From IMG/VR virus record IMGVR_UViG_3300008110_010000, positions 62,001 to 126,000 of that record: a stretch of 64,000 bases of DNA. One strand, written 5' to 3'. The notes beneath the pieces are model-generated. The model was not told the DNA's origin and made no database searches. It was given only the letters and a program-made list of their open reading frames with translations. How positions within the stretch are numbered: the stretch's first letter is position 1; the number at the start of each line of letters is the position of its first letter. Of the stretch, positions 4,024-64,000 are shown piece after piece. Position numbers and translations under genes: made by a program.

Positions 4024-4096
<73 letters not shown>

Positions 4097-4131
4097 CAAA
4101 ATATAAAAACAAGTATTTTTATAAATAGAAC

Positions 4132-5220
4132 ATGACTGATTATCTAATAGTTGGAGCTGGACTTTACGGATCTATTGTTGCAAACGAATTAAAAAAATCA
4201 GGTAAGTCAGTTATTGTAATAGATCAGAGAGATCATATTGGAGGAAACTGTTTCACACAAAGCATAGATGGTATTAATGTTCATAAATATGGGCCCCATA
4301 TATTTCACACAGATAATCTAAGTGTTTGGAATTACATTCAAAAATTCTGCGATTTTAATCATTTTAGCTACAGACCAAGGGTTAACTATAAAGGAAAAAT
4401 ATATTCCTTTCCGATCAACTTACTAACTTTTCAACAAGTATATGGTATCAGTTCTCCTGCTGAAGTCCAGAAATTACTGGAAGAGATAAGGATTTTTCAC
4501 GAGGATCCAAAAAACATGGAAGAATGGATGCTAGATCAAATTGGACCAGATCTTTATAAAATTTTTATAGAAGGGTATACTACAAAACAGTGGGGAAGAT
4601 CTCCGAAGGAACTTCCTGCTTCCATAGTAAAAAGAATTCCAATACGTCTAACTTTTGATGATAATTACTATAATCATCCATACCAAGGAATCCCAGTTGG
4701 CGGGTACACACAGATTTTTGAAAAACTTCTTAATGGTATAGACGTCAGATTAAATCACAATTATTTTGATAATAAAGAATTTTTTGACTCTCTAGCAAAG
4801 AATGTAATTTACACCGGTCCGATAGACAGATTCTATAATTATGAATTTGGAAAATTAGAATATAGATCCTTAGATTTTAAAACAGAACTTTTAGATATTC
4901 CGGATTTTCAGGGGGTAGCTGGGGTTAATTATACAGATTTAGATGTACCATATACAAGAATAGTAGAACACAAACATTTTGAATTTGGAAAACAAAACCA
5001 CACGATCATCACAAAAGAATATTCAAAATCGTTAGGTGATCCCTACTATCCAATAAATGACGGAAGAAATCAAAAGATTTATGAAGTGTATAGATCCAAG
5101 TCCGTGGAAAATCCGAAGTTTAATTTTGGCGGAAGATTAGCAGAGTATAAGTATTATGACATGCATCAAATAATCTCGCAAGCCCTTGATTTCTCTTCGA
5201 AAATTAGAATCAAAAATTAA
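4132..5220 (+). CDS. glf: UDP-galactopyranose mutase
   Basis: GAGLYG FAD motif, HIGGNC, YGPHIFHT, YTTKQW, YYP, GRLAEYKYYDMH. Confidence 0.93.
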   Translation: MTDYLIVGAGLYGSIVANELKKSGKSVIVIDQRDHIGGNCFTQSIDGINVHKYGPHIFHTDNLSVWNYIQKFCDFNHFSYRPRVNYKGKIYSFPINLLTFQQVYGISSPAEVQKLLEEIRIFHEDPKNMEEWMLDQIGPDLYKIFIEGYTTKQWGRSPKELPASIVKRIPIRLTFDDNYYNHPYQGIPVGGYTQIFEKLLNGIDVRLNHNYFDNKEFFDSLAKNVIYTGPIDRFYNYEFGKLEYRSLDFKTELLDIPDFQGVAGVNYTDLDVPYTRIVEHKHFEFGKQNHTIITKEYSKSLGDPYYPINDGRNQKIYEVYRSKSVENPKFNFGGRLAEYKYYDMHQIISQALDFSSKIRIKN

Positions 5221-5822
5221 TTTTTGTGATCCTTGTCTTCGCAAAGCATTTCTAATTGTTCCCAGCTAAATTTTGGCTTTTCATTTAAAAAAACAAAGCA
5301 TCTCCACTTTTTTTGAGACTCAAAGTAGATATGCTTTTGTAGGTGGGAGGGAATGGCAGCATTTGTCTCAACTCTTTTAACGGGATTGTCAAAAAATATT
5401 TTAATTAATACAGTGATATTTTCTTTATCGTCCCATTTTCTGATCTGCTCCTCCAATAATCTCCATTCACCCCTATTCAGATACTGATTTTGCATAATGC
5501 AATTAAGGTAAGAAAATGTTTGCTTTAGGTTTTCCATGTTGTCAGAAAATGTAGCAGCAGGTGCTCCATGTCCTTTATCATACACATTTTTTACATAATC
5601 ATCAGCATCCGAAGTTTTGACTGATTTTTCTGTGTAAAAATCCATTGATCCCCTATTAACATTAGTAGGTCTGTTGGTTGATCTATATTTGATCCATAAA
5701 GGCTGCTCTAATTTCTGCGAATATAAAACTTCAAACACTTGATTTTTAATTCTTACTGTGTCTTGGGCTTTTAATACTACTGATAGTGATAAAAATAGAA
5801 GTACTGATAAAATTCTTTTCAT
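5217..5822 (-). CDS. DNA/RNA non-specific endonuclease (NucA/EndA-like) with signal peptide
   Basis: DKGHGAPA His-Me finger motif, LNRGEWRLLEE, hydrophobic N-terminus. Confidence 0.8.
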   Translation of the reverse strand: MKRILSVLLFLSLSVVLKAQDTVRIKNQVFEVLYSQKLEQPLWIKYRSTNRPTNVNRGSMDFYTEKSVKTSDADDYVKNVYDKGHGAPAATFSDNMENLKQTFSYLNCIMQNQYLNRGEWRLLEEQIRKWDDKENITVLIKIFFDNPVKRVETNAAIPSHLQKHIYFESQKKWRCFVFLNEKPKFSWEQLEMLCEDKDHKN

Positions 5823-5824: not shown

Positions 5825-6643
5825 TTATTTTTTTCTTTTTAACTCTTTCATCGGAACATTTACATGTTTACCGAACGGCATTTGTTTACTGCTTATCATT
5901 GCCCAAATAATTTTTTTGTGCCATTTTGGTTTTTCAGGGTCGTGAGCACCACCGTCAGTAAAGTATATGAGGCAGGCAAGATCTTTTCCTTTTTTTAGAA
6001 TGTTATCTTCTGCCCATTTTATAGGCGGGTCAAATCCAAGTTCGTTACCACCCGTAGATCCCTGTTTAGAAGGATCTAATTTTTGAGTTGGGTATTTTAA
6101 ATAATCTATACCATCTATGTCATCACTGCAATAGATTATCCAAATTTCTTCAGGAGAAAAAGCTTTAAGTATACTTCTAGCTTCTGTCAAGAAAGTATTA
6201 TATTCTTCGGATCCTATACTTCCGGAGGTATCAACTGCAATTACAACTGATCCAAATCCCTCTTCCTTTCCTCTTAGACCAGGAAGGTAAATGCCTTGAC
6301 TAGCATATCTTCTGTTTGGTATTTTATACATTGTAGGTTCCTCGTTGGCAGTCGAAACGTATCTTTGTAATATTTTTCTCCAATTAATCTGTGGATTAGC
6401 TAATCTTTCAACGAATTTTCTAAGAGCCCCTGATCCTCCTCCACTGCCCATTCCTCTGTTTGCAGCATTGTTTACTATTTCTTTTACCTTGTCTTTTACA
6501 GATTTTCTTTCCTTCTGTATTGGTTTTTCTTTCTGTGGATTCCAATCCCCCTTCTCTTGATCTGGCTTATCTGGATCCCCATCTTTCCATTCGCTTTCTT
6601 TTTCGTCAGAAATGATTTTGTATTTTCCTTTTTGTACGTACAT
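5825..6643 (-). CDS. VWA-like domain protein (DUF2201 C-terminal part)
   Basis: INWRKIL, PNRRY, AVDTSGSI (MIDAS), YFTDG. Confidence 0.8.
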   Translation of the reverse strand: MYVQKGKYKIISDEKESEWKDGDPDKPDQEKGDWNPQKEKPIQKERKSVKDKVKEIVNNAANRGMGSGGGSGALRKFVERLANPQINWRKILQRYVSTANEEPTMYKIPNRRYASQGIYLPGLRGKEEGFGSVVIAVDTSGSIGSEEYNTFLTEARSILKAFSPEEIWIIYCSDDIDGIDYLKYPTQKLDPSKQGSTGGNELGFDPPIKWAEDNILKKGKDLACLIYFTDGGAHDPEKPKWHKKIIWAMISSKQMPFGKHVNVPMKELKRKK

Positions 6644-6644
6644 A

Positions 6645-7616
6645 TTAAACTTCTATATCTCCGTTTTTATAAACCTTCTTTATAGTTTTAATAGCTCCGC
6701 TATCTAATCTTACTTTTTGTCCGGTTTTAGGTAACTCCAATTCTCCGGATCCTCCCTCGGCATTTCCTGATCCTCCTTCACCTTCACCTTCTCCTTCACC
6801 TTCACCTTCTCCCTCGCCTTCTCCTTCACCTTCTCCCTCGCCTTCTCCCTCGCCTTCTCCCTCGCCTTCTCCTTCGCCTTCTCCTTCGCCTTCTCCCTCG
6901 CCTTCTCCTTCGCCTTCTCCCTCGCCTTCTCCCTCGCCTTCTCCCTCGCCTTCTCCCTCTCCTTCACCTTCTCCCGGTTGGTTATCATCAATTTCGGGGG
7001 TTTCCTCTTGGGGTTCTTCCGCATCCTTAGTGATTGAATCTTTCTCCCCAAGAACAGTTTCAGTAACTTGATCATGATCTATAGCTCCCGGCTCAAAAAC
7101 GTCACAATATGATTTAAAGAAAGGGTCTATTTTTAATCTACCAGATTTTATCTGGTCATAGATTTCTTCAGCAGAGAGATCCTGGAATTTTGAAGATTGC
7201 ATGGTAGTAGGAAGCTTTGATTTTCCAATACCATCTAAAAAAGCTTCAGCTGCCATGTCACATGCTGCGTTCCAGATATTAGTATCTTTACTTCCGATCC
7301 TATCATAGTGATCTAAAGCAAGATGAGAAATTCCTTGGCTAATAGCCCAGATTATTTCGTCTTCAGAAAGATCTATAACATTTTTAGGATTAAATATGAA
7401 TATGGTGCCATCAGTTGAAAAATATTCGCATTCATCAGAAACTCCTACTGGGATTTCAGCAAGAACCCTCCCGAATAATCCCTCTTTCATTAAGATTTTT
7501 GAAACCGATCTTCTAACTCGCATGACTGCTCTTTCATAGTCCTGCTCACTAATTCCGTAACTTGATGAATTTTCTAACAGAATACCATATTCTGCAAAGT
7601 TTCTAATTTTTCTCAT
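6645..7616 (-). CDS. DUF2201 N-terminal metallopeptidase-like protein with degenerate HExxH and a (GE)n tract
   Basis: STDG, QGISHLALDH in place of HExxH, WNAACD, SAEEIYD. Confidence 0.7.
   Translation of the reverse strand: MRKIRNFAEYGILLENSSSYGISEQDYERAVMRVRRSVSKILMKEGLFGRVLAEIPVGVSDECEYFSTDGTIFIFNPKNVIDLSEDEIIWAISQGISHLALDHYDRIGSKDTNIWNAACDMAAEAFLDGIGKSKLPTTMQSSKFQDLSAEEIYDQIKSGRLKIDPFFKSYCDVFEPGAIDHDQVTETVLGEKDSITKDAEEPQEETPEIDDNQPGEGEGEGEGEGEGEGEGEGEGEGEGEGEGEGEGEGEGEGEGEGEGEGEGEGEGEGEGEGEGEGEGEGGSGNAEGGSGELELPKTGQKVRLDSGAIKTIKKVYKNGDIEV
6775..6975 (-). repeat. Coding 6-/12-bp tandem repeat encoding about 33 Gly-Glu units
   Basis: CCTTCTCCCTCG and CCTTCA repeats on the plus strand. Confidence 0.95.
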
Positions 7617-7617
7617 T

Positions 7618-9186
7618 CTAGATTTCTTTCATTAAAGATCTATATCTGTTCACAAATGGTGTTACATATTGTTCTAGAGAGGTATCACCCAAATAGTTTT
7701 TGATTTCCGGATGAGTTCTTTTTGCCATGTTTAATGCACTCATAGCTAATTCTCCTGTGTTTAAATCTGTTAGATATGTTATAAAATTAGTGAATTCATC
7801 TTTTGTTAACTGTTGTCCGTTTTTGTATTTGGATGCTAAGTACATGATGCTATAGCCTTTTCTCAGATCAACTCTTCCAGTATTAGAACTCATTGGAAGT
7901 TTTACTGTTTCATCGCTAGGATCCGTAAATATCTTTTCTATTCTATTAACTGGCCAAACCTTCATCGTTTCAAGGAAATCTGTAATAATTGATGATACTT
8001 TTTTACCAATGTGTTTATCGAAGATAAGTCTGGTAGTTTCTGCTGAGATATCCCCTCCTTTTTCTTTTTGTGCGTCTCTCCTTTCTTTATATTCTCTAGC
8101 AGCATATTCCCATGCTCTTGGTGTAACACCCATTGTAGTTTCAATATCTCCTCCAACTAATCCGCTAGGTAAAACATAGAAATAATCCTGCATAAGTTCT
8201 ACAAATGCTATAACCTCGTCGCTTAGATCTGCTTCTTTTCTTCCCCTTGCCCATTTTGTCCAAGATACAGGATCGGAAATAAAATTGACTTGAGCAAATC
8301 TATTGGCTAGTGCGAAGCTCATTGGTTTAATCATAGATCCTGGTTCATCCTCCGGTCTATTTGCTGCAGCTAGAATTAGCCATTTGCTAGGAATTTTATA
8401 ATTAGCACTTGTGATTTCTCTGTCCAAAACAACTTTGAGCATTGCCGCTTGAACCGATGGGTGTGCTCTGTTAATCTCGTCTAAGAATATAATTCCACCC
8501 TTCCCCTCGATTTTTTCTATAGTGCCATCTTCCCTCTTGATTTCTCGGTCTCCGTTATCTAAAGGCCAAATCATTGGTAAATAATTTACTGATCTTTTTA
8601 CGTCGTAATCTACATCCTTTTCAGCACCAGGTAATCCGGCAACATCCGTCGGTTCCATTAAACTTAGAATTACCTCGATAACAGGAACACCCATTCCCTT
8701 AGTCCCAAAAGATTTTACCACGGAGGTTTTACCAATTCCTGGTGCTCCCCAAATTAATAATGGTCTACCAGTTTCTGGTTTCTGGAAGTGATATGATAGT
8801 TCCCCCGTTAACTGATCAGCATCAACGTCAGTTATTTGAGAGTCTTGGGTCTTTTGAGCAGTTTTCCAAGATGGATCATCAGATTCTTTAATTGAAGAAA
8901 TCGATCCGGATCTAAAGTTATACGAACTGCCAGCATCACCCTCTGGAAGGTAAACCTTTACAACACTCCGTGCTTTTGCTATATTACCATTTGCGTCTTT
9001 GAATTGTTCGAACCTTCCAGTCTCCGGATTGTATTTTTTGTCTCTAACTGGAATTTCCCCTTCCTTTTCTGCACGGATTAAATTCATTAGCCAGTTTCCT
9101 GCTTTTTTTAGTAATTCTGCTCCCCTGGAAAATATCCCAGCTTCATTAAGTCTATTAAACTCTTGAAATCCTTTGATTCTTTTCAT
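7618..9186 (-). CDS. MoxR-like AAA+ ATPase
   Basis: GAPGIGKT Walker A, IFLDEINRA Walker B, AANR, ALANRF, TPRAW. Confidence 0.88.
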   Translation of the reverse strand: MKRIKGFQEFNRLNEAGIFSRGAELLKKAGNWLMNLIRAEKEGEIPVRDKKYNPETGRFEQFKDANGNIAKARSVVKVYLPEGDAGSSYNFRSGSISSIKESDDPSWKTAQKTQDSQITDVDADQLTGELSYHFQKPETGRPLLIWGAPGIGKTSVVKSFGTKGMGVPVIEVILSLMEPTDVAGLPGAEKDVDYDVKRSVNYLPMIWPLDNGDREIKREDGTIEKIEGKGGIIFLDEINRAHPSVQAAMLKVVLDREITSANYKIPSKWLILAAANRPEDEPGSMIKPMSFALANRFAQVNFISDPVSWTKWARGRKEADLSDEVIAFVELMQDYFYVLPSGLVGGDIETTMGVTPRAWEYAAREYKERRDAQKEKGGDISAETTRLIFDKHIGKKVSSIITDFLETMKVWPVNRIEKIFTDPSDETVKLPMSSNTGRVDLRKGYSIMYLASKYKNGQQLTKDEFTNFITYLTDLNTGELAMSALNMAKRTHPEIKNYLGDTSLEQYVTPFVNRYRSLMKEI

Positions 9187-9200
9187 TTTTTTATTTTTTT

Positions 9201-10022
9201 TTAATCCTCGAAAAATCCTGCTGATTTGAGATCGCCAAGATTGTCTATAGTTTGTGCTACGTTTTCTGTTCCTTTTTCTTTTGCAAGATTTGAAATCATA
9301 TCAAAAACACCTTCTGAGAAATTTAATGCAACAAAGTCTCCGGGCTTTTGATTAAAGAGATCTAATAATTCCTGAGTTACATCAAATTCCGGTTCCTGCA
9401 TCTCTTTGGGATTTGCAAATTTTAAACCGATGTCCTCGGAAGATGCCGCAAAAAGTTTTTTAATTGTTTCTATCTGGAAATCCATTCCTCCATAAAATGA
9501 GAATTGTAAAGCCTTGTTAGTTTCGAATCCGTTTGCAATTTTTTTTCTGATGTTCTTTACTACTTCTTCGTCCCATCCTTGTTTTTTCATTAGAATTTCA
9601 AGTATCAATGCGTTACCAGATTTAAAATAAAAAGCAACATTTTGACCAAATCCAGGGATCTCAGAAAAAATTGAAGCCTTTCCTGTTAGTGATCCCGACA
9701 CCATATCAGCTGGAGAATTCATTACCGTATATCCATCCTGATTTGCGCTTCTACTATATGAAATACCTCCCTTAACTTCTGGAGTTTCTGATTTAAAATG
9801 CGGGCTATTAATAAATTGGGAGGTTTCCACAGTACATGGAACCAATACATATCCAGCTACCCCGCCAGTTCCTAAAAGTTCCGAAGGAAATTTGGTATCG
9901 GAGGTTGATAGATTTTTATCCACTGATTTGAAGTTTTTATCAACAGGAACAAATATAAAAGCGGAATGCGTTCCTATAAATCCTTCGTTGATAAACCCAG
10001 TAAAGTCTAAGATTCTTTTCAT
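9201..10022 (-). CDS. Hypothetical protein (start revised to 10022, MKRILDFTGFINE)
   Basis: ATG follows GATATATA at 10035-10028. Confidence 0.7.
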   Translation of the reverse strand: MKRILDFTGFINEGFIGTHSAFIFVPVDKNFKSVDKNLSTSDTKFPSELLGTGGVAGYVLVPCTVETSQFINSPHFKSETPEVKGGISYSRSANQDGYTVMNSPADMVSGSLTGKASIFSEIPGFGQNVAFYFKSGNALILEILMKKQGWDEEVVKNIRKKIANGFETNKALQFSFYGGMDFQIETIKKLFAASSEDIGLKFANPKEMQEPEFDVTQELLDLFNQKPGDFVALNFSEGVFDMISNLAKEKGTENVAQTIDNLGDLKSAGFFED

Positions 10023-10103
10023 TTTTTTATATATCAAAAAAATAAAGCCCACATCTGAAATATTTTTGGAAATTTCTCATAAAATGATCATATAAACACG
10101 ATA

Positions 10104-10880
10104 ATGAAGACTTTCGGGAAATTTAGCGCTGCAATTGATTGGACAAAATCTAAAATGTCTGATTATTGCTATGAGGTTCACACAGAAAAGTGGCAAGGCA
10201 AGAGAATTAAGGAGGACCTAAGATTCACTATGATTGAAATTCTCAATCATTCTTTCTCCTGCACAATGGTGGAGGATTTAGATGAATTGGTTAGCCAAAT
10301 AAAGCCAAATCTCCCTTGGGCTGATGATCATTTTCTAGAAAGAGTCGGGGGTAAACCCTTAAATCCTCCTCCTTCTCATAACTGGTGGCCTTTCGCACAG
10401 AAGAACAATCAAGAATTCGGGGGAACCACTAAATTTTCCCATACATATCCTGAAAGAATATGGCCTAGATACGCTAAGGATGATCCCAATCATTTAATGG
10501 AGGGAATTAGATTCGAGTATGGTGATTTTAATATGGTAGTGGATCTTTTAGAAAAGGAGCCATCAACTAGACAGGCCTTTCTTCCAATTTGGTTCCCAGA
10601 GGATACTGGGGGTGCAAACGGAGAAAGAGTTCCTTGTACTATTGGATATCACTTTATCATGAGGCATGGATACATGCATGTTGTTTACTATATAAGATCC
10701 TGTGATTTCTTCAGACACTTTAGAGATGACATTTATCTGTGTTGCAGAAAAGTACTTTGGCTTCTTGAAAGACTAAGGGAAAGGGATTCTTTCTGGAAAG
10801 ATGTTAAACCTGGTATGTTTACCATGCATATCACCTCCTTGCACGCATTCAAAAGTGAAAAATACCTACTTTCCAAGTAG
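10104..10880 (+). CDS. Thymidylate synthase-superfamily protein, probable dCMP-modifying enzyme
   Basis: TRQA, VPC catalytic Cys, RSCD, SLH; Asp at the position of E. coli ThyA N177. Confidence 0.75.
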   Translation: MKTFGKFSAAIDWTKSKMSDYCYEVHTEKWQGKRIKEDLRFTMIEILNHSFSCTMVEDLDELVSQIKPNLPWADDHFLERVGGKPLNPPPSHNWWPFAQKNNQEFGGTTKFSHTYPERIWPRYAKDDPNHLMEGIRFEYGDFNMVVDLLEKEPSTRQAFLPIWFPEDTGGANGERVPCTIGYHFIMRHGYMHVVYYIRSCDFFRHFRDDIYLCCRKVLWLLERLRERDSFWKDVKPGMFTMHITSLHAFKSEKYLLSK

Positions 10881-10965: not shown

Positions 10966-11463
10966 ATGACAGAGGAAAATAATAAAAAACCCCCTAGCTA
11001 TCTAAGGGCTTCTTTAAAAACAGGAAAGCCTGTTCTTTATATTGATATGGACGGGGTTCTCTGTGATTTCGATAAAAGACAGGAAGAGCTATCAGCCAGA
11101 GGAATCAAGCAATATCAAGCTTTCAACCATACCCTTGCTTTTAAAGATTTGGATCCAATCCCTGGGGCAATAGAAGCATGGCACGCTTTGCAAGAAAAAT
11201 ATGATGCATACATTCTTTCTACTGCTATGTGGTCAAATGTGGAAGCCTGGACAGATAAAAGGGTTTGGGTTCAGAAATATCTAGGAAAAAGTGCCAATAA
11301 AAAATTAATACTTTCTCATAATAAGGGATTGCTAAGAGGTGAATATTTGATAGATGACCGTGTAGCTAATGGTGTTGCAGATTTTGAAGGAGAGCATATC
11401 CACTTTAGAACCGAAAAATTCCCAACGTGGAATGAAGTTTTACAATACTTGCTAACCAAATAA
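10966..11463 (+). CDS. HAD-family 5'(3')-deoxyribonucleotidase (NT5C-like)
   Basis: IDMDGVL, ILST, K..W, LIDD. Confidence 0.85.
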   Translation: MTEENNKKPPSYLRASLKTGKPVLYIDMDGVLCDFDKRQEELSARGIKQYQAFNHTLAFKDLDPIPGAIEAWHALQEKYDAYILSTAMWSNVEAWTDKRVWVQKYLGKSANKKLILSHNKGLLRGEYLIDDRVANGVADFEGEHIHFRTEKFPTWNEVLQYLLTK

Positions 11464-13604: not shown

Positions 13605-13835
13605 ATGGAAAATTTTGAAAAAATCCTGGGTGAAGAACAATTTGAGGTCGAGATCGATTCTCAAATAAATGTTGCATATAACAATATGTATAGCTGTTTT
13701 ATGCTGGGGGATCCAGTTAGAATTGCTAGAAAGATAGGTACTAAAAGCGAGATAGGAGAAATGCTAGACTATTTTTCTTCTCGTGAAGAATATGAAAAGT
13801 GCCATTTTCTTTCTAAGATCCTGGAAAAAATTTAA
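13605..13835 (+). CDS. Small hypothetical protein with UVR-like C-terminal motif
   Basis: EEYEKC motif; class I promoter upstream. Confidence 0.6.
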   Translation: MENFEKILGEEQFEVEIDSQINVAYNNMYSCFMLGDPVRIARKIGTKSEIGEMLDYFSSREEYEKCHFLSKILEKI

Positions 13836-13905
13836 AAATAGCCTCTTTTTTAGAGGAAATTTACCATGGGAAGAATATATAAAGACAGAAATATAACATA
13901 TTACT

Positions 13906-14271
13906 ATGCAGAACCTAAAACAAATGGAAGATTATAAAAAGGAAAGAATGTCTAAATCCCCTGTTGATGAAGCTCCTGTTGCTGATGATAATCTAGGCAT
14001 GGAAGACACTGAGGACGGAGAAGATATGGATATGGACTTTGCGGAAGAGCCAACTTTCTCACAAGAGGTTCCTGGACAAATAGAAATAGAGCCGAGTGAA
14101 GCTAAGCCCTATATGGTATTAGCAAATTTGAAGAAAATATGCGACCAGGCTAATCAACTAGTTTCTATGGTTCAAAGTTCTGGTAAAGTTGAGCAATGGG
14201 CAGTTGACCACATTACTACTTCGGCAGACGATATTGAGGAGGTTTATAACTATTACAAATACAGAGATTAA
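13906..14271 (+). CDS. Acidic hypothetical protein
   Basis: ORF after AATATATA, followed by a terminator. Confidence 0.7.
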   Translation: MQNLKQMEDYKKERMSKSPVDEAPVADDNLGMEDTEDGEDMDMDFAEEPTFSQEVPGQIEIEPSEAKPYMVLANLKKICDQANQLVSMVQSSGKVEQWAVDHITTSADDIEEVYNYYKYRD

Positions 14272-14293
14272 AAATATCTTACCTAATAATTAG

Positions 14294-14320
14294 AAGCCTC
14301 GGAAACCCCGGGGCTTTTTT
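14294..14320 (+). terminator. Intrinsic terminator
   Basis: AAGCCTCGG-AAACC-CCGGGGCTT followed by a T run. Confidence 0.75.
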
Positions 14321-14346
14321 ATTGTATAATAAATTAAAAATAAACC

Positions 14347-14616
14347 ATGGCTGACAAGAATTTTAGGAGAGTTAAGGACATTAGCCCAGATCTAGAAATT
14401 TACTACAGAAAGTATTTTGAAAGAAACGCTACCAAGTTTATCTGGAAATGGAATCTTAAGATGGCTGATCTCGAAGATACCTGGATTAGCGAGGATATTG
14501 AATACTCAATAATCGGACAGGTCAGCGAGCACACATTCATATTAAAAAGACTAGATGAAAATTCTAGATGGTTCGTTTCAGGAGAAAAGTTCGTAAGGGA
14601 TTTCTCTAAAAAATAA
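14347..14616 (+). CDS. Hypothetical protein
   Basis: ORF after a class II promoter. Confidence 0.6.
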   Translation: MADKNFRRVKDISPDLEIYYRKYFERNATKFIWKWNLKMADLEDTWISEDIEYSIIGQVSEHTFILKRLDENSRWFVSGEKFVRDFSKK

Positions 14617-14624
14617 AGGGGAAT

Positions 14625-15083
14625 ATGACAAGAGAATTTAAAAAGATCGGTGGGGAAAATGTAGCTGATCTATTATTATATGCAAAGGAAATTCTGGCAA
14701 AAAACCCAGATTCTAAAATACATGTGGGTTGTGATAGCCAGTCATATGCAACAAAAACAGTTTATGTTACAACAGTTGTCTTTAGGTACGAAAACAGAGG
14801 AGCTCATGTAATTTATCAAAGAGAGGTAATCCCAAGGGTAAAGGATCTTTGGTCTAAACTCTGGGGCGAACTTAACAGAGCTATTGATGTTGCGGGATAT
14901 TTGAAATTCGAGGGAAAAATTGATATTCACCAGATAGATCTGGATTATAACACAAGCCCGAAATATAAGTCTAACATCGTTTTAAAAGCTGCAGTCGGAT
15001 ATGTTGAAAGCATGGGATATAATTACGCTGTAAAACCCGAAACCCTTATCGCAATCAGTGCAGCAAACGAGCTTTGCCGCTGA
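14625..15083 (+). CDS. RNase H-like YkuK/DUF458 family protein
   Basis: VGCDSQ, KLWGE, DLDYN, VKP...AA motifs. Confidence 0.75.
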   Translation: MTREFKKIGGENVADLLLYAKEILAKNPDSKIHVGCDSQSYATKTVYVTTVVFRYENRGAHVIYQREVIPRVKDLWSKLWGELNRAIDVAGYLKFEGKIDIHQIDLDYNTSPKYKSNIVLKAAVGYVESMGYNYAVKPETLIAISAANELCR

Positions 15084-15129
15084 AACCAAAGAACATTTTA
15101 GATATATAAGACTTAAATTAATCAAAAAC

Positions 15130-15324
15130 ATGAAAAAAATCTTAGGAATTTTCGCATTATCTTTTGCTTTAGTTTCTTGTGGTTCTGGATCTTCTAATTC
15201 AGAATCTACAGTAGATTCTACCGCAGTGCAAGTTGATTCTTTAGCAGTAACTGCAAATGACTCAACAACGGCTCAAATCCCAACTGAAGAAGCACCAGCT
15301 GAACCAGTAGAACAAGTGAAATAA
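15130..15324 (+). CDS. Small lipoprotein
   Basis: MKK, hydrophobic core, LVS-C lipobox; DST/DSL/DST sequons. Confidence 0.8.
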   Translation: MKKILGIFALSFALVSCGSGSSNSESTVDSTAVQVDSLAVTANDSTTAQIPTEEAPAEPVEQVK

Positions 15325-15346
15325 CTTGAAAGAATTTGAATAGAAG

Positions 15347-15371
15347 AAGCAGACGAGAGTCTGCTTTTTTT
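15347..15371 (+). terminator. Intrinsic terminator
   Basis: AAGCAGAC-GAGA-GTCTGCTT followed by a T run. Confidence 0.8.
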
Positions 15372-15394
15372 ATTGTCCATCAAAAAATATCAAA

Positions 15395-15700
15395 ATGAAA
15401 GACGTTTTTTATTCAAAAGGTTTTATTCCGGGGAGGATGATCAGCGGATCAAAATCCAGATACAGAGACTTGTATCCTGACAACGAGGTTTATTTTAATG
15501 CGAACGTGTTTGTTTTAGGAGAGGGGAAGATTTGGCACGGGGATTTAGACTTAACAAGGGATAAGGATTCTCTTAGGGAAATAGCTAGGGAAATCGGGAA
15601 AAATCTTTTTATTCTTAGTGAAATGGACGGGAGATTCGAAAATGAGAACAGAACAGATTCCGATATCATAAAATTTGCAGTCCATAAGGTGGAAATCTAA
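15395..15700 (+). CDS. Hypothetical protein
   Basis: 101-aa ORF. Confidence 0.65.
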   Translation: MKDVFYSKGFIPGRMISGSKSRYRDLYPDNEVYFNANVFVLGEGKIWHGDLDLTRDKDSLREIAREIGKNLFILSEMDGRFENENRTDSDIIKFAVHKVEI

Positions 15701-35778: not shown

Positions 35779-36021
35779 ATGTCGGTTACTGAAAAAAAAT
35801 ATATTATGGAGGAAAATTTAAGAGAATCCCTAGCGGATTTTCTAAAAAATCCCTTCGATAACTATCAGGAATTGATTGGTTTGATTGAAAGCAAAAGCTC
35901 CTTCACAGAATCTGAAATCAACAAGATAGTTTCTCTGCTCGGTAAGTTTCCTGCTTATTCTGTTTATCCAGTAATAGATTTATTTAAAGGAAACTTAAAA
36001 GAGGAAAATATTGGAGAATAA
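35779..36021 (+). CDS. Hypothetical protein
   Basis: ORF after a class I promoter (TATATTTG at 35752). Confidence 0.6.
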   Translation: MSVTEKKYIMEENLRESLADFLKNPFDNYQELIGLIESKSSFTESEINKIVSLLGKFPAYSVYPVIDLFKGNLKEENIGE

Positions 36022-36523
36022 TTTTTTTACTGAGCAAGATTCAAATAACTGTTTAGATAAAAAGCAGTTTAAGTTAGATCTTGTTTATCTCAGAATGGCA
36101 AAAGAATGGTCAACTAATTCTCATTGCAAAAGAAGTCAGGTTGGATGTTTAGTAGTCAAAGACAAAACCATAATTTCAGACGGATATAACGGAACTCCAA
36201 CAGGATTTCCAAACATTTGCGAAAATGAAATAAATGAAACCTTGCCTTATGTTTTGCACGCAGAAGCAAATGCTATAACAAAGCTTGCAAAAAATACGGT
36301 GAGTTCACACGGGAGCACGATGTATGTAACGCTTTCCCCGTGTTATGATTGCTCAAAATTAATTATTCAATCCGGGATTAAAAGAATCGTTTTCTGTGAG
36401 ATTTACAGAAAGACTGATTCTCTCCAACTGCTAAACCAAGCTGGGATTGAAATTGTTTATATTAACTTACATAACCCTTTAAACCAAGAACCAGATGGCA
36501 AAGAGCATTCAAGAATTAGCTGA
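36011..36523 (+). CDS. dCMP deaminase
   Basis: C.R.QVG, GYNG, HAEANAI, PCYDC. Confidence 0.92.
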   Translation: MENNFFTEQDSNNCLDKKQFKLDLVYLRMAKEWSTNSHCKRSQVGCLVVKDKTIISDGYNGTPTGFPNICENEINETLPYVLHAEANAITKLAKNTVSSHGSTMYVTLSPCYDCSKLIIQSGIKRIVFCEIYRKTDSLQLLNQAGIEIVYINLHNPLNQEPDGKEHSRIS

Positions 36524-53380: not shown

Positions 53381-54321
53381 TAAACATGCTTTTAACAGAA
53401 AAGCTTAGGCCTAAAGAGCTTAAGCACATGATTTTACCAGAGAGGATCAAGGATGCTTTCAAGAACGGTTTACAACAAAACGTATTACTGACTGGATCTC
53501 CAGGATCTGGTAAAACTTCTCTTGCAAAGATTTTGTCTGAAAATTCACCAAGGCTTTTTATCAATGTTTCCGATGAAAGTTCTGTTGATACCGTACGAGA
53601 AAAAATTACAGGATTTTGTTCGACTGTGTCAATCATGAACGACGAAAATCCAACAAAGATCGTGGTTCTTGACGAGTTTGACGGGGCTTCTGATCAATTC
53701 TACAAAGCACTTAGAGGTGTTATCGAAAAATTTGCCAAGAATACTAGATTCGTAGCAACCTGCAATTGGATCAATAAGGTACCAGATCCGATGAAGAGTA
53801 GATTTGAGGTTTTTGTCTTTGATCCTGTTAACAAGGAAGAAGAGCAGGATCTCAAGGATCAGTGGGAAAAAAGAATAGTACTCATTCTAGGAAAGTTAGG
53901 AATTTCTATCGAGGATAAAGCATTACAATCTTTCGTCAAGAAGTATTATCCTGATATGAGATCAGCTCTGAATTGCATTCAAAGGTGGCAAATTCAAGGC
54001 ACAGAAAAAATAACAGATCAGAAGGTATCTGAAACAGCTTGGGACTATGAAGAACTTTATGAAATGCTTTTTCAAAAATTAGACCCTCTTAAAAGTTATC
54101 AAACAATAGTCGGACAATATTCTAATTCTGTTGGTGAGGTAATGGAATCACTTGGACGAGATTTTATAGAATGGATCAGGGAAAGAAAACCCGAAAAAAT
54201 CTCTATAATTCCTGCTGTTATTATTTTAGTTGCACAACACCAATCCCAAAGACATCAGGTCATCGATCCCGTAGTGAGTCTATTATCACTTTTTTATTCG
54301 ATTCAAAAATTAACTCAATAA
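53377..54321 (+). CDS. Clamp loader large subunit (T4 gp44/RFC-like)
   Basis: EKLRP, GSPGSGKT, LDEFD, SRF, PDMR. Confidence 0.9.
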   Translation: MINMLLTEKLRPKELKHMILPERIKDAFKNGLQQNVLLTGSPGSGKTSLAKILSENSPRLFINVSDESSVDTVREKITGFCSTVSIMNDENPTKIVVLDEFDGASDQFYKALRGVIEKFAKNTRFVATCNWINKVPDPMKSRFEVFVFDPVNKEEEQDLKDQWEKRIVLILGKLGISIEDKALQSFVKKYYPDMRSALNCIQRWQIQGTEKITDQKVSETAWDYEELYEMLFQKLDPLKSYQTIVGQYSNSVGEVMESLGRDFIEWIRERKPEKISIIPAVIILVAQHQSQRHQVIDPVVSLLSLFYSIQKLTQ

Positions 54322-54800
54322 TGGCTTTTAAGGATAGTAAAATAATTTTAGTTGGTAGAGGAGGATCCGGGAAGGATTTCATGAGAAAAAAGCTCGAACA
54401 AAGAGGATTTAAATACTGTGTTTCCTATACTAGTCGCCCAAAAAGGGAAACTGAAAAGGAGGGGAGGGATTACTACTTTAGAGACGATACCTTCTTCAAT
54501 AATAACGTTCACAAGTTTTATGAAATAGATGATTTCAATGGATGGAAGTATGGAAGAACTATAGAGGACTTTGAAAAATCCAGTCTTTTGATTATGACAC
54601 CAAGAGGTGTTGCAAGCATAAAACCAGAGCACAGAAAAAAGTGTTTTATTATTTTCATAGATCCTGACAGAGAAATCCTAAGAAAAAGATTAGCAGAAAG
54701 AAATGATGCAGATAGTGCAGAACGTAGATTAGAGGCTGATGACAGGGATTTTATGGATTTTAAAGACTATGATATTAGAATTAAAAACGAAGACTTTTAA
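54321..54800 (+). CDS. Guanylate kinase-like NMP kinase (start revised to MAFKD)
   Basis: GRGGSGKD, SYTSRPKR.E..G.DYYF, YG. Confidence 0.85.
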   Translation: MAFKDSKIILVGRGGSGKDFMRKKLEQRGFKYCVSYTSRPKRETEKEGRDYYFRDDTFFNNNVHKFYEIDDFNGWKYGRTIEDFEKSSLLIMTPRGVASIKPEHRKKCFIIFIDPDREILRKRLAERNDADSAERRLEADDRDFMDFKDYDIRIKNEDF

Positions 54801-61888: not shown

Positions 61889-62707
61889 ATGCCCGAAATC
61901 AGTGAGGTTAGAATAATGTCCGAATTTATCAACAGGAGAGCGGGAGAAGTTGATTATTTCCACAGCATTTCCAAAAATCCAGAGCATAAGAGCAAAACGA
62001 ACTTGATCCTTCCCTTTTCTAGATTTCAGCTAAGAGCTGATTCCCGGGGTAAGGAATTAAGATTGAGATTTATTGATCTTGATTTTAAATATGAGGAAAC
62101 ATCAAGTAGGGATATGGTTTTTACTATGGGAATGAGCGGAAATTGGAATTATTCCAACGATGTTTTCTCCATTCCAAACCACACACATCTAAGAATTGTT
62201 GATTCCAAGTATGGCATTCTTGGATTACATGACGTTAGAAGATTTGCCAGATGGGACTGGAGAGGATGGAATCCGGAAAGAGGTCCGGACCCAGATACTG
62301 AATTTGATTCTTTCGTTGACAACATTTACAAGAATATTCAAACGGACAGGGTTTTTAATAAACCCGTGTATGAAGTATTAATGAACCAAAAATATTTTAA
62401 CGGCGTAGGAAATTACTTAAGAGCGGAGATTCTAGGAAGAATCGATTCAGATCCCACAGCTTCTGCCAGAGAATATATTCTTCTTAATGGACCTGAATTT
62501 TTTGCTATTCTTTCTAAGGTTATTAAGGAATCCTATATCCTAGGAGGAGGACAATTTAAAGATTGGTACAATCAGGCAGATTTGGAAAAGAAAAAAAGTA
62601 AAGAATTTCAAGCATGGATGAAATTCTATTTACATAAAGAAAGGTGTATTGCAATTAAAGATTCGTCTAAAAGAACTTTTTGGATGGATAAAAAATGGAT
62701 AAAATGA
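61889..62707 (+). CDS. Fpg/Nei family DNA glycosylase (no zinc finger)
   Basis: N-terminal MPE, GKEL, GMSG, RRFA, GPD, NQ..FNGVGNY. Confidence 0.88.
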   Translation: MPEISEVRIMSEFINRRAGEVDYFHSISKNPEHKSKTNLILPFSRFQLRADSRGKELRLRFIDLDFKYEETSSRDMVFTMGMSGNWNYSNDVFSIPNHTHLRIVDSKYGILGLHDVRRFARWDWRGWNPERGPDPDTEFDSFVDNIYKNIQTDRVFNKPVYEVLMNQKYFNGVGNYLRAEILGRIDSDPTASAREYILLNGPEFFAILSKVIKESYILGGGQFKDWYNQADLEKKKSKEFQAWMKFYLHKERCIAIKDSSKRTFWMDKKWIK

Positions 62708-63399
62708 TAAGTAAAGAAGACCTTAAAAAAATTCTATATTTCGACATCGAAACTGCTGGGATAACGAATACTTTCGAAGAGCTTGAAATTGAAAATCCTA
62801 GACTTGCTAAATTGTGGGAAAAAAGATCATCCTGGCTCTTGAAAAATTCAGGTGAAGAGATGAAAGATTATTCTCCAGCAGATTTTTGGAAGGTTAAATC
62901 TTCGTTGCACCCGGAGTTCTCCAAAATCGTTTGCATAACTTTTGGATGCTATGATGAAGATAAATCAATCAGGCTAGTTTCTTTTTCCGGTGAAGAGGAT
63001 CAAATTCTGATGGATTCCAACAAGATCTTTAATAACGCATTTACAAAAGGATGGAAACTTGCAGGACATACGATTAAAAATTTTGACATTCCCTTTGTTG
63101 GAAAGAGAATGATAATCAATAAAATTAAGCCTTCCCATTTGGTAGCATATCTGAATAGAAAACCCTGGGAATCTCCACACCTAGACATATCTGAGATTTT
63201 TGCTTTTGGAGGATGGGGACAAACTCACACTTCACTTGATTTAATGGCTTGCGTTCTGGGTATAGAATCCCCTAAAGACGATATGGACGGATCAATGGTC
63301 CATGAATACTTCTATGAGGGAAAGATTGAGAACATTAAAAAGTACTGCGAAATGGATGTGACTGTTCTGATGAAGTGCTTTGATGCTCTTTCTTTTTAA
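62695..63399 (+). CDS. DnaQ-like 3'-5' exonuclease (PolB exo2 family)
   Basis: FDIET, GH.IK.FD.PF, SL, YCE.DV. Confidence 0.82.
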   Translation: MDKMISKEDLKKILYFDIETAGITNTFEELEIENPRLAKLWEKRSSWLLKNSGEEMKDYSPADFWKVKSSLHPEFSKIVCITFGCYDEDKSIRLVSFSGEEDQILMDSNKIFNNAFTKGWKLAGHTIKNFDIPFVGKRMIINKIKPSHLVAYLNRKPWESPHLDISEIFAFGGWGQTHTSLDLMACVLGIESPKDDMDGSMVHEYFYEGKIENIKKYCEMDVTVLMKCFDALSF

Positions 63400-63420
63400 T
63401 CTAATTACAACTATAGTACT

Positions 63421-63460
63421 ACACCCTAGGATATATACTTTTAAAATATTCCTAGGGTGT
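63421..63460 (+). promoter_or_regulatory. 11-bp inverted repeat enclosing a late promoter and covering the GTG start
   Basis: ACACCCTAGGA...TCCTAGGGTGT; GATATATA at 63430-63437; GTG at 63457. Confidence 0.7.
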
Positions 63461-64000
63461 TTCGTATACAAAATTTTAAAGACTGGTCGCTAAACGAGGA
63501 TCGTTTCTATCAAAAGGAGCTAAATACTGTTTTTTGGAAGAATGGCTCGTTCGACTCTGGGGTAAGAGAAAAACTTCTAGATATAGCCCAGGATTTCTAC
63601 TCGATCTTTAAAATAGAACTGCCGATAGATGATATTCAATTAACCGGATCTCTGGCAAATTATAACTGGACCCCAAAATCAGATCTTGATGTTCACGTTT
63701 TAATCGATTTTTCACAGATAGATTCCAATAAAGAGCTTGTAAAAAAAGCTTTTGATGGACAAAGATTCATATGGAATCTAAGGCATAACATTGTTATCAG
63801 AGGGTATGATGTTGAACTTTACCTACAAGACATAAACGAACCCCATGTAGCATCCGGACTTTTTTCCCTTAAAAACAACGAATGGATTAGAATTCCTTCT
63901 TATAATCCTCCTCAGATAGACGAAAGAGATGTGGATTTGAAATATGATGGTATTATAAACGATATAGACAGTGTGGATATAGAACTTTCTAAAACAGACT
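63457..64000 (+). CDS. Pol-beta-superfamily nucleotidyltransferase, 3'-truncated
   Basis: MFRIQNFKDWSLNE..., LTGSLANYNW...SDLDVH, VELY. Confidence 0.8.
   Translation, partial: MFRIQNFKDWSLNEDRFYQKELNTVFWKNGSFDSGVREKLLDIAQDFYSIFKIELPIDDIQLTGSLANYNWTPKSDLDVHVLIDFSQIDSNKELVKKAFDGQRFIWNLRHNIVIRGYDVELYLQDINEPHVASGLFSLKNNEWIRIPSYNPPQIDERDVDLKYDGIINDIDSVDIELSKTD

What the first reader, a model, noticed from the sequence alone, without database searches (positions are those of the whole stretch)
10104..10880. Thymidylate synthase homologue with the dCMP-specifying Asp: probable cytosine modification
RSCDFFRHFRDD aligns with E. coli ThyA RSCDVFLGLPFN, placing Asp at the N177 position. Known: Asn selects dUMP, whereas Asp selects dCMP as in T4 gp42 hydroxymethylase. 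A deoxyribonucleotidase is adjacent, and a dCMP deaminase and an NMP kinase are elsewhere in the window. GATC and CCGG sites look common by eye, consistent with protected DNA, but this was not counted.
Basis: partly seen in the sequence, partly recalled or inferred. Interest (0 to 1): 0.6.

Follow-up and report, generated by a model that had tools for sequence, protein, structure and literature searches.

The report
Phage cytosine-modifying thymidylate synthase homologue
A freshwater jumbo phage encodes a very divergent thymidylate-synthase-like enzyme whose active site is built for dCMP rather than dUMP; with a T4-like dCTPase, kinase and deaminase it probably replaces cytosine in the phage DNA by a 5-substituted cytosine whose chemical identity is still open.

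Summary
ORF 10104-10880 (+, 258 aa) has the thymidylate synthase (TS) fold. Its motif RSCDFFRHFRDD (nt 10695-10730) aligns without gaps to E. coli R166-N177, so Asp209 falls on N177, which is T4 gp42 D179.

Other cytosine-type markers agree: H147 is Thr and Q165 is Ile. D169 is kept, so this is not the flavin-dependent 5-hydroxy-dCMP type.

The context argues for a cytosine-replacement pathway like that of T4:
- The 219-kb phage contig also encodes a T4 gp56-like dCTPase/dUTPase, a guanylate-kinase-like NMP kinase and a dCMP deaminase.
- All seven near-complete relatives carry this homologue together with a separate canonical ThyA that has the full N177 signature.

The product cannot be assigned:
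- The family forms its own long-branched clade.
- It lacks the TS C-terminal tail.
- It has an invariant Arg where hydroxymethylases have Asp/Glu and TS has Leu.

The nucleotidase is adjacent in only 8 of 80 relatives. The GATC and CCGG excess disappears under a second-order Markov model.

Verdict: probable dCMP C5-modifying enzyme, a new variant of a known kind. No direct evidence of modified DNA could be obtained.

The parts
10104..10880 (+). Divergent TS-superfamily enzyme (P0001, 258 aa), predicted dCMP C5 one-carbon transferase. Catalytic Cys178 is in ERVPCT (nt 10623-10640). RSCD..H..DD is at nt 10695-10730, with Asp209 at the N177 position.
10966..11463 (+). NT5C-type 5'(3')-deoxyribonucleotidase (165 aa), 86 nt downstream on the same strand. 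It is conserved in relatives (about 63% identity) but usually at a distant locus.
   Evidence: Pfam PF06941 4.2e-15; within 10 kb of the TS homologue in 8 of 80 relatives; present elsewhere in G008 and G009
36011..36523 (+). dCMP deaminase (170 aa, HAE...PCxxC zinc site). It supplies dUMP, or may deaminate the modified dCMP or dCTP.
   Evidence: PF00383 2e-25; phrog_174 8.5e-57; present in 7 of 7 near-complete relatives
54321..54800 (+). Guanylate-kinase-like NMP kinase (159 aa), candidate kinase for the modified dCMP. It is not a T4 gp1 (DNMK) homologue.
   Evidence: PF00625 8.2e-16; phrog_1815 5.6e-37; no similarity to T4 gp1; present in 7 of 7 near-complete relatives
5217..5822 (-). DNA/RNA non-specific endonuclease (201 aa). 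It may degrade unmodified host DNA (inference only).
   Evidence: PF01223 4.3e-22; within 10 kb of the TS homologue in 20 of 80 relatives
62695..64000 (+). Exonuclease part of a split family-B DNA polymerase, the enzyme that would have to accept the modified dCTP. The polymerase part lies outside the window at G000 216469-217878, immediately followed by the gp56-like dCTPase/dUTPase at G000 217880-218359.
   Evidence: PF10108 DNA_pol_B_exo2; phrog_2062 DNA polymerase 3e-73; gp56-like 31% identity to T4 gp56, 8e-25

Best explanation
P0001 is an active, folate-dependent member of the thymidylate synthase superfamily that acts on dCMP, not dUMP. It adds a one-carbon unit at C5 as the committed step of a pre-replicative cytosine-replacement pathway of the T4 type.

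Proposed pathway:
1. The gp56-like pyrophosphatase (G000 217880-218359) turns dCTP and dCDP into dCMP and keeps dCTP out of the pool.
2. Cys178 of P0001 attacks C6 of dCMP, whose N3/N4 face is read and protonated by Asp209.
3. Methylene-tetrahydrofolate donates the carbon and an exocyclic methylene intermediate forms.
4. The guanylate-kinase-like kinase and the host NDP kinase raise the product to the triphosphate.
5. The phage family-B polymerase incorporates it.

dTMP comes from a separate route: dCMP deaminase plus a canonical ThyA. That ThyA is present in the relatives. It was not found in this 79%-complete contig, where the host enzyme or the missing part of the genome would have to serve.

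What is shown: fold, catalytic residues, cytosine-type specificity residues, and co-occurrence of the pathway genes. What is inferred: substrate, pathway and product.

My best guess for the last chemical step is capture of water, giving 5-hydroxymethyl-dCMP, at about 0.4. The reason is that the enzyme lacks the C-terminal tail and the R21 loop that seal the TS site for hydride transfer. However, the Asp/Glu that activates the water in known hydroxymethylases is replaced by an invariant Arg. 5-methyl-dCMP (about 0.25) or another 5-substituent therefore remains open.
For: TS fold.

Catalytic and folate-site residues retained: C146, Y94, R126, R166, S167, D169, H207 and an acid at E58.

Specificity residues of the cytosine type: N177D, H147T and Q165I, as in T4 gp42, RB69 gp48 and PaMx74. 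All five dUMP users tested have N177. The rule comes from the literature.

Conservation: the motif [E/G]RVPC[T/S]..RSCD..H..DD is kept in 80 of 80 IMG/VR relatives, and 95 columns are invariant among 37 homologues. The gene is therefore under selection and not decaying.

Pathway genes: a T4 gp56 homologue is in the same genome (1.4e-19 and 8e-25, full length), directly after the polymerase gene.

Co-occurrence in 16 large relatives:
- gp56-like in 14 of 16, and in 7 of 7 near-complete genomes.
- Canonical ThyA with every canonical residue in 15 of 16, and in 7 of 7.
- Kinase in 7 of 7.
- Deaminase in 7 of 7.
The homologue is thus a second, specialised TS paralogue.

Small siphophage relatives (PMBT14, Muddy, Zuko, P744, Strzyga) carry the gene in a cassette of dNMP kinase, NTP pyrophosphatase, TS homologue, dCMP deaminase and PolA. 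This is the same cassette logic as in the 5mC phage PaMx74.

The C-terminus aligns with E. coli TS residue 219 of 264, so the tail is absent as in T4 dCH.
Against: There is no direct evidence of modified bases. All public runs holding the phage are kept only as contigs.

The family is its own clade (100/99 support, stem length 3.65). Function cannot be transferred from any characterised relative.

The hydroxymethylase signature of Park et al. 2019 is not met: Arg175 stands in place of Asp145 and His113 in place of Ser94.

The R21 loop and R127 of the phosphate site are missing, so nucleotide binding may differ.

The gp56-like enzyme could be only a dUTPase.

No T4 gp1, alpha-gt or beta-gt homologue was found, and no glycosyltransferase is conserved with the relatives.

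This contig itself lacks a canonical ThyA or ThyX. Here the homologue is the only TS-like gene, which leaves some room for a role in dTMP supply.
Confidence: 0.7

Rival explanations
1. It is a dCMP methylase of the XP12/PaMx74 kind. It makes 5-methyl-dCMP, so the phage DNA carries 5mC in place of C. The dCMP deaminase homologue then deaminates part of the 5-methyl-dC nucleotide pool to give dT nucleotides. That would explain why this contig needs no canonical ThyA.
For: Asp is at position 177, as in PaMx74. Five of seven metagenomic N177D homologues tested by others made 5mdCMP, and their deaminases supply dTTP. This contig has no ThyA or ThyX but does have a deaminase. The small-phage relatives have the PaMx74-like cassette of pyrophosphatase, TS and deaminase.
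Against: The enzyme is not in the PaMx74 clade (27% identity over the C-terminal half). [quoted passage not shown] All near-complete relatives keep a canonical ThyA, so the deamination bypass is not needed in the lineage. DHFR is absent in 16 of 17 genomes, though this point is weak because the canonical ThyA also needs DHFR.
Confidence: 0.2
2. It traps the exocyclic methylene with a nucleophile other than hydride or water, or it acts on a cytosine nucleotide other than dCMP (for example CMP, as MilA does). The result would be a new 5-substituted cytosine or a non-DNA product.
For: The invariant Arg175, His113 and His205 sit where TS has Leu143, Val93/Pro92 and Gly173, and where hydroxymethylases have Asp/Glu, Ser and Gly. 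This constellation matches no characterised subgroup. The best PDB sequence and fold hit is MilA, a CMP hydroxymethylase. Tyr209, the ligand of the 3'-OH, is Phe or Trp.
Against: The pathway partners (dCTPase-like enzyme, deaminase, polymerase neighbourhood) are those of DNA precursor metabolism. The MilA similarity is marginal: E 1.5e-4, and Z values are tied with ordinary TS. Nothing identifies an alternative nucleophile.
Confidence: 0.1
3. It is simply the phage's thymidylate synthase. It makes dTMP from dUMP and the DNA is canonical.
For: It is annotated 'thymidylate synthase' in about 190 phage records. It is the only TS-like gene in this contig. The dCMP deaminase could feed it dUMP.
Against: Asn177, His147, Gln165, Leu143, Arg127, the R21 loop and the C-terminal tail are all replaced or missing. 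The relatives carry a fully canonical ThyA alongside it. N177D mutants of TS switch to dCMP (literature).
Confidence: 0.05

Closest known systems
T4 gp42 deoxycytidylate hydroxymethylase (dCH; PDB 1b5e, 6a9b)
   Same: TS fold. Cys nucleophile. Asp at the N177 position. Thr after the Cys. A hydrophobic residue at Q165. Asp169 kept. No TS C-terminal tail. The genome also has a gp56-like dCTPase/dUTPase, a dCMP deaminase, a family-B polymerase and, in the relatives, a separate canonical td/ThyA.
   Different: Only 25% identity over 122 residues, and a separate clade. Arg replaces the water-activating Asp145 and His replaces Ser94. The kinase is guanylate-kinase-like, not gp1. No alpha- or beta-glucosyltransferase homologue was found.
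XP12 / PaMx74-type 5-methyl-dCMP synthase
   Same: Asp at position 177. In the small-phage relatives the same gene cassette occurs: NTP pyrophosphatase, TS homologue and dCMP deaminase next to a polymerase gene.
   Different: PaMx74 ThyA is a close relative of ordinary ThyA (PF00303 145 bits) and groups with E. coli ThyA in the tree. P0001 scores 21 bits, lacks the tail and the R21 loop, and is about 27% identical over its C-terminal half only.
MilA CMP 5-hydroxymethylase (PDB 5jnh, 5b6d)
   Same: It is the best sequence hit in the PDB (1.5e-4) and the top Foldseek hit. It is cytosine-specific, with Asp at position 177.
   Different: MilA acts on the ribonucleotide for antibiotic synthesis in Streptomyces and has Asp three residues before the Cys. 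P0001 has Arg there and sits in a phage DNA-precursor context.
RB69 gp48 / DLP3 gp80 / HY126 AfhB 5-hydroxy-dCMP synthases (flavin-dependent)
   Same: TS fold, Asp at position 177, Thr after the Cys, Phe at Y209. A structural hit with Z 16.0 (9iqu).
   Different: Their diagnostic D169N change is absent: P0001 keeps RSCD. It therefore most likely remains folate-dependent.
Canonical ThyA (E. coli; also the ThyA of the related jumbo phages)
   Same: Fold. Cys146, Tyr94, Arg126, Arg166, Ser167, Asp169 and His207.
   Different: N177D, H147T, Q165I, L143R, G173H, F176D, R127Q and Y209F. No R21 loop. No residues equivalent to E. coli 220-264.

Membership tests
Thymidylate synthase superfamily (ThyA fold) | TS alpha/beta fold | tested here: met
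   AF2 model pTM 0.81. Foldseek prob 1.00 to 396 TS-family chains. VIA-align Z 15-16.4 with about 200 aligned residues.
Thymidylate synthase superfamily (ThyA fold) | Catalytic Cys in a P-C motif, plus the R-S-x-D motif 20-23 residues later | tested here: met
   VPC178 and R198-S-C-D201. Kept in 80 of 80 relatives.
Thymidylate synthase superfamily (ThyA fold) | Pfam PF00303 gathering score | tested here: not met
   21.4 bits against a cut-off of 24.3 for P0001. Clade members PMBT14 gp47 and Muddy gp46 pass with 28 bits. phrog_160 gives 7.5e-26.
Canonical dTMP-forming ThyA | Asn177, His147 and Gln165 reading the uracil O4/N3 face | tested here: not met
   The residues are Asp209, Thr179 and Ile197.
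Canonical dTMP-forming ThyA | C-terminal tail and R21 loop that close the site for hydride transfer, and Leu143 | tested here: not met
   The model end aligns with E. coli residue 219 of 264. No Arg aligns at position 21, and Arg175 sits at position 143. The role of the tail is taken from PMC6400193.
T4 gp42-type dCMP hydroxymethylase | Asp at the N177-equivalent position (T4 D179) | tested here: met
   Asp209.
T4 gp42-type dCMP hydroxymethylase | Asp/Glu three residues before the catalytic Cys (water activation; D145N is inactive) | tested here: not met
   Arg175, invariant in 37 homologues and in 80 loci. The signature is from PMC6400193 and PMC13326640.
T4 gp42-type dCMP hydroxymethylase | Ser/Thr two residues before the catalytic-base Tyr | tested here: not met
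   The sequence is His113-Thr114-Tyr115. The alignment of this loop is less certain because pLDDT is below 50 at residues 112-115.
T4 gp42-type dCMP hydroxymethylase | Falls in the gp42 clade | tested here: not met
   It forms its own clade with 100/99 support. T4 gp42 sits on a long branch, so its exact placement is unsure.
T4-type cytosine replacement pathway | dCTPase (gp56), dCMP deaminase, a kinase for the modified dNMP, and a separate td | tested here: met
   gp56-like. cd. A guanylate-kinase-like kinase, but no gp1 homologue. Canonical ThyA is found only in the relatives and not in this contig.
T4-type cytosine replacement pathway | DNA glucosyltransferases acting on hmC | tested here: not met
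   No T4 beta-gt homologue. The many glycosyltransferases of this genome are not shared with relatives G008 and G009. T4 alpha-gt was not tested.
Flavin-dependent 5-hydroxy-dCMP synthase | D169N substitution | tested here: not met
   Asp201 is retained, whereas RB69 gp48 shows RSQN in the same alignment.
XP12/PaMx74-type 5-methyl-dCMP synthase | Asp177 on an otherwise ThyA-like scaffold, grouping with PaMx74 | tested here: not met
   The Asp is present, but the protein is outside the PaMx74 + ThyA group. PaMx74 scores 145 bits on PF00303 against 21 for P0001.
Any of the above | Identity of substrate and product | not testable with these tools
   This needs an enzyme assay or nucleoside LC-MS. 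Only assembled contigs of public runs were available.

The most novel reading that the evidence does not exclude
This clade has more than 3,400 proteins in metagenomes and about 190 isolated phages, including Mycobacterium phage Muddy and many Gordonia phages. It may be a third mechanistic type of dCMP-modifying TS homologue. In that reading the invariant Arg175/His113/His205 triad directs the exocyclic methylene intermediate to a nucleophile other than hydride or Asp-activated water, producing a cytosine derivative not yet described. In this particular phage the derivative might then be decorated further by its lineage-specific sugar machinery: a UDP-galactopyranose mutase 5 kb upstream and at least seven glycosyltransferase-type genes.
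Probability: 0.12. Interest if true: 0.8.

Novelty: new variant of a known kind. Interest (0 to 1): 0.5.

Why it matters
TS homologues with Asp at position 177 are the entry point to every known pre-replicative cytosine modification in phages: 5mC, 5hmC and its sugars, 5-hydroxy-C and its sugars. This clade is large and widespread. It occurs in abundant freshwater jumbo phages found in at least 13 independent studies. It also occurs in small siphophages, including the therapeutically used mycobacteriophage Muddy.

The clade is routinely annotated as plain thymidylate synthase, yet its active site fits neither the methylase nor the hydroxymethylase signature. If its members do replace cytosine, three things follow:
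- Many phages thought to have canonical DNA would be resistant to restriction and CRISPR, and partly invisible to some sequencing chemistries.
- The paired canonical and divergent TS genes in the jumbo relatives would be an independent re-invention of the T4 td/42 division of labour.
- The product could be a new base, or a new enzymatic route to a known one, which is of interest for epigenetic sequencing tools.

Tried and rejected
1. **Direct evidence of modification from reads.** The look-up of sequencing runs returned 20 holders, all freshwater or lake metagenomes kept as Logan contigs, and two RNA runs with small shares. Read laying showed RNA contigs only over 9000-10010, the neighbouring minus-strand genes, and none over the ORF. 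Neither modification nor expression can be read from this.

2. **Restriction-site avoidance as a proxy.** GATC and CCGG are in excess against mono- and dinucleotide models but at par under a second-order Markov model. CGCG and GCGC are depleted (O/E 0.14 and 0.23 mononucleotide; 0.57 and 0.75 Markov). The pattern is not interpretable for or against protection.

3. **Functional link to the adjacent NT5C nucleotidase.** It is a neighbour in only 8 of 80 relatives, although the gene is conserved elsewhere in the relatives' genomes.

4. **Link to the UDP-galactopyranose mutase 5 kb upstream and to the many glycosyltransferases.** GLF lies within 10 kb in 2 of 80 relatives. None of this genome's glycosyltransferase, radical-SAM or sugar-nucleotide genes is shared with the complete relatives G008 and G009. 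They are a lineage-specific island, not part of the conserved pathway.

5. **A second TS-fold 'partner' protein.** Such a gene precedes the homologue in the small siphophages. It has no homologue in this genome, and the divergent upstream ORF 9201-10052 is unrelated to it.

6. **T4 gp1, beta-gt and Dam homologues.** None found.

7. **MazG (PF03819) and trimeric dUTPase (PF00692).** None found.

8. **Literature search for a characterised member of this clade** (PMBT14, Serbin, Muddy, Zukovirus). Nothing found in the held library.

Full report
**Setting.** The window is bases 62001-126000 of a 219,355-bp IMG/VR viral contig. CheckV rates it 79% complete and its ends are linear. GC content is 35%.

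The contig is a T4-like jumbo myophage. It encodes:
- UvsX, a DnaB-like helicase and Mre11/Rad50-like proteins;
- a T4-type terminase, sheath and portal, gp23 and gp32;
- a split family-B polymerase, two sigma-like factors and nine tRNAs.

Identical or near-identical DNA occurs in freshwater and lake metagenomes from at least 13 studies.

**The observation.** ORF 10104-10880 (+) is intact and encodes 258 aa.
- The nucleophile motif ERVPCT is nt 10623-10640.
- From the Cys to the last Asp is 31 residues, exactly as from C146 to N177 in E. coli ThyA. MAFFT places D209 on N177 and on T4 gp42 D179.

Sequence similarity to ordinary TS is weak: PF00303 gives 21.4 bits, under the 24.3 cut-off. Other evidence makes the fold secure:
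- phrog_160 matches at 7.5e-26.
- An AlphaFold model built on 37 homologues has pLDDT 78.7 and pTM 0.81.
- That model hits TS-family structures with Foldseek probability 1.00.
- VIA-align gives Z 15-16.4 over about 200 residues.

**Active-site reading.** I fetched enzymes of experimentally known specificity and aligned them.

| Group | Enzymes | Residue at 177 |
|---|---|---|
| dUMP users | E. coli ThyA, RB69 td, SPO1 gp29, M6 and ViI hydroxymethylases | Asn in all five |
| dCMP users | T4 gp42, RB69 gp48, PaMx74 ThyA | Asp in all three |

P0001 and all its relatives have Asp. They also share Thr at H147 with T4 gp42 and RB69 gp48 (PaMx74 has Pro) and, like all three dCMP users, a hydrophobic residue at Q165. 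Positions 177 and 147 are the two that a metagenome-wide association study found most diagnostic of cytosine-modified phage DNA (PMC8670742).

Residues retained: C146, Y94, R126, R166, S167, H207, an acid at E58, and D169. The last point excludes the flavin-dependent 5-hydroxy-dCMP synthases, whose signature is D169N (PMC13326640). RB69 gp48 shows that Asn in my alignment.

Residues that differ from every characterised group:
- Arg175 lies three residues before the Cys. TS has Leu143 there and all hydroxymethylases have Asp or Glu.
- His113 lies two residues before Tyr115, where T4 has Ser94.
- His205 is at G173.
- Gln replaces R127.
- Phe or Trp replaces Y209.
- There is no R21 loop.

The protein ends where E. 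coli TS residue 219 aligns, so the C-terminal 45 residues are absent. These include the tail that seals the site for hydride transfer (PMC6400193).

The string [E/G]RVPC[T/S]..RSCD..H..DD is kept in 80 of 80 IMG/VR relatives. This is a conserved, working active site and not a relic.

**Phylogeny and distribution.**
- The word-index search found 3,454 homologues at E <= 1e-5.
- tblastn found 190 isolated-phage records, all under 60% identity.
- The full-length relatives (41-47% identical) are Brevundimonas, Streptomyces, Microbacterium, Yersinia, Serratia, Pseudomonas (PMBT14), Mycobacterium (Muddy) and many Gordonia phages.
- In a maximum-likelihood tree the family is one clade (100/99) on a stem of 3.65 substitutions per site, outside every characterised group.
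- PaMx74, the 5mC type, groups with ordinary ThyA.

Function therefore cannot be transferred by clade membership.

**Genomic context.** This is the strongest new evidence.

In this genome:
- There is a full-length homologue of T4 gp56 dCTPase/dUTPase at G000 217880-218359 (1.4e-19; 31% identity, 8e-25 pairwise). It lies directly downstream of the polymerase-domain gene.
- The window itself holds a dCMP deaminase at 36011-36523 and a guanylate-kinase-like NMP kinase at 54321-54800.

I then took 16 large related contigs whose homologue is 60-71% identical.

| Gene | All 16 relatives | 7 relatives at least 90% complete |
|---|---|---|
| gp56-like | 14 | 7 |
| Kinase | 12 | 7 |
| Deaminase | 11 | 7 |
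| Second PF00303 gene (270-325 bits) | 15 | 7 |

I extracted three of these second genes. They carry every canonical residue: R21, E58, W80, Y94, R126, R127, L143, C146, H147, Q165, R166, S167, D169, G173, F176, N177, H207 and Y209.

The lineage thus keeps a normal thymidylate synthase and this divergent paralogue side by side, exactly as T4 keeps td and gene 42. That is hard to reconcile with the divergent gene being just another dTMP synthase.

ThyX is absent from all 16. DHFR is present in 1 of 17.

The window's own contig has no canonical ThyA or ThyX. The gene may lie in the missing 21% or have been lost.

**Small-phage relatives.** PMBT14, Muddy, Zuko, Yersinia P744 and Brevundimonas Strzyga carry the homologue in one cassette: dNMP kinase, NTP pyrophosphatase/dUTPase, an unannotated 260-350 aa protein, the TS homologue, (usually) a dCMP deaminase, and DNA polymerase I.

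Apart from the extra protein, this is the arrangement of PaMx74. That arrangement is described for phages that replace C by 5mC and make dTTP by deaminating 5-methyl-dCTP (bioRxiv 10.1101/2024.12.05.627091).

The extra protein aligns weakly as a degenerate TS fold. It has a Cys, an R-[ST] motif and an Asp at position 177, but lacks Y94 and H207, and it has no Pfam match. It has no counterpart in the jumbo phage.

- The NT5C nucleotidase is real and adjacent, but it lies within 10 kb of the homologue in only 8 of 80 relatives. The gene is conserved elsewhere in relatives' genomes, so it may belong to nucleotide metabolism in general.
- GATC and CCGG are frequent (z about 9.5 and 6.3 against dinucleotide shuffles). 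Under a second-order Markov model they are at par, while CGCG and GCGC are depleted. No conclusion on protection can be drawn.

**Mechanism and product.** I commit to a folate-dependent C5 one-carbon transfer to dCMP as part of a T4-type replacement pathway (confidence 0.7).

The reasoning for a folate-dependent transfer is that Cys178, the Tyr115 base, the acid at E58, Asp201 for the pterin and the Trp at position 83 are all retained.

For the last step the evidence points in different directions:
- No tail and no R21 loop argue against a sealed site and hydride transfer, and so for hydration to 5hm-dCMP.
- The Asp/Glu whose carboxylate is essential in T4 dCH (D145N is dead) is an invariant Arg here.

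My estimates are:

| Outcome | Probability |
|---|---|
| 5hm-dCMP | about 0.4 |
| 5m-dCMP | about 0.25 |
| Another substituent or substrate | about 0.15 |
| No cytosine modification | about 0.2 |

No glycosyltransferase is conserved with the homologue. The striking sugar, radical-SAM and 2OG-oxygenase islands of this genome, and the UDP-galactopyranose mutase at 4132-5220, are absent from relatives G008 and G009. Any further decoration would therefore be specific to this phage, and it remains speculation.

**Novelty.** Using N177D to predict dCMP-directed TS homologues in viromes is established practice. The kind of thing is therefore known.

What is not described in the library I could search is this clade with its Arg/His/His active site. 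It is annotated as thymidylate synthase throughout. I rate it a new variant of a known kind, of moderate interest. The product is a directly testable question.

**Limits.**
- There is no experimental or read-level evidence of modified DNA.
- The model has low confidence at residues 112-115 and 165-174, next to two of the unusual residues.
- T4 gp42 and RB69 gp48 sit on long branches in the tree.
- The contig is incomplete.
- The gp56-like enzyme may be a dUTPase only.

Noticed in passing
window 4132-5220 (+): A phage-encoded UDP-galactopyranose mutase (PF03275 GLF, 3e-76; phrog_9677 4e-125) lies 5 kb upstream of the TS homologue. Such mutases were recently tied to galactofuranosyl DNA modification in Pootjesviridae (PMC13326640). 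Here the gene lies within 10 kb of the homologue in only 2 of 80 relatives and is absent from G008 and G009.
   Followed up: partly
G000 3.5-50 kb and 143-152 kb (outside the window; loci L011-L013, L015-L016): Large accessory islands. They hold at least 6 radical-SAM/SPASM proteins, 3 2OG-Fe(II) oxygenases, 2 SET-domain proteins, GT7 x2, GT8, a GT2-radical-SAM fusion, GT10, a pyruvyl transferase, mannose-1-P guanylyltransferase/isomerase, GDP-mannose-dehydratase-like epimerases, ATP-grasp enzymes and methyltransferases. None is shared with two complete relatives. The target (virion glycan, host surface or DNA) is unknown.
   Followed up: partly
loci L002 5214-6047, L003 5165-6004, L023 4144-4932, L024 4033-4926, L025 3880-4941: In small siphophages (P744, Strzyga, PMBT14, Muddy, Zuko) the TS homologue is always preceded by a 260-350 aa protein without Pfam match. 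It aligns as a degenerate TS fold: Cys, R-[ST] and Asp at position 177 are present, but Y94 and H207 are lost. It may be a heterodimer partner or a second enzyme. One record annotates it 'pyrimidine hmase synthase'.
   Followed up: partly
window 62695-64000 and G000 216469-217878: The family-B DNA polymerase is split. The exonuclease part is at the end of the window and the polymerase part about 92 kb away. The polymerase part is immediately followed by the gp56-like pyrophosphatase, and this adjacency is kept in relatives G008 and G009.
   Followed up: partly
window 48635-50278 and 50282-51994: Two adjacent genes of 547 and 570 aa both match PF07230 Portal_T4. Both are conserved in the relatives. 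This may be a duplicated or split portal.
   Followed up: no
window 5825-9186 (-) and G000 208080-211516 (+): A trio of a MoxR-like AAA_5 ATPase and two DUF2201 (VWA-like / putative metallopeptidase) proteins occurs twice in the genome.
   Followed up: no
window 1820-4097: A cluster of nine tRNA genes: Cys, Asn, Glu, Lys, Tyr, Gln, Asp and Gly x2. Short stretches are about 90% identical to tRNAs of Erwinia jumbo phages.
   Followed up: no
G000 13606-15480 (-), outside the window: A 624-aa protein with Hint/intein-splicing domains (PF14890, PF01079) and an AXH match. It may be an intein-containing gene.
   Followed up: no
window 41528-43300 (+): A collagen-triple-helix repeat protein (PF01391, 8e-19) in the only GC-rich stretch of the window (46% GC at 42-44 kb), followed by a glycine-rich-domain protein. 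CCGG sites cluster here.
   Followed up: no
window 61071-62707 (+): A UvdE-like UV endonuclease and an Fpg/Nei-like DNA glycosylase (weak match) lie next to the polymerase exonuclease gene. Base-excision enzymes are of some interest in a phage suspected of carrying non-canonical cytosine.
   Followed up: no
relatives G002, G006 and G009 (loci L125-L127): The canonical ThyA genes of the related jumbo phages are unusually long, at 406-416 aa. Several have the PF00303 match broken at profile position 222-235, which suggests an insertion near the C-terminus.
   Followed up: no
whole genome G000: CpG-containing palindromes are strongly depleted against base composition: CGCG O/E 0.14, GCGC 0.23, ACGT 0.45. 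CCGG and GATC are enriched at 1.8.
   Followed up: partly
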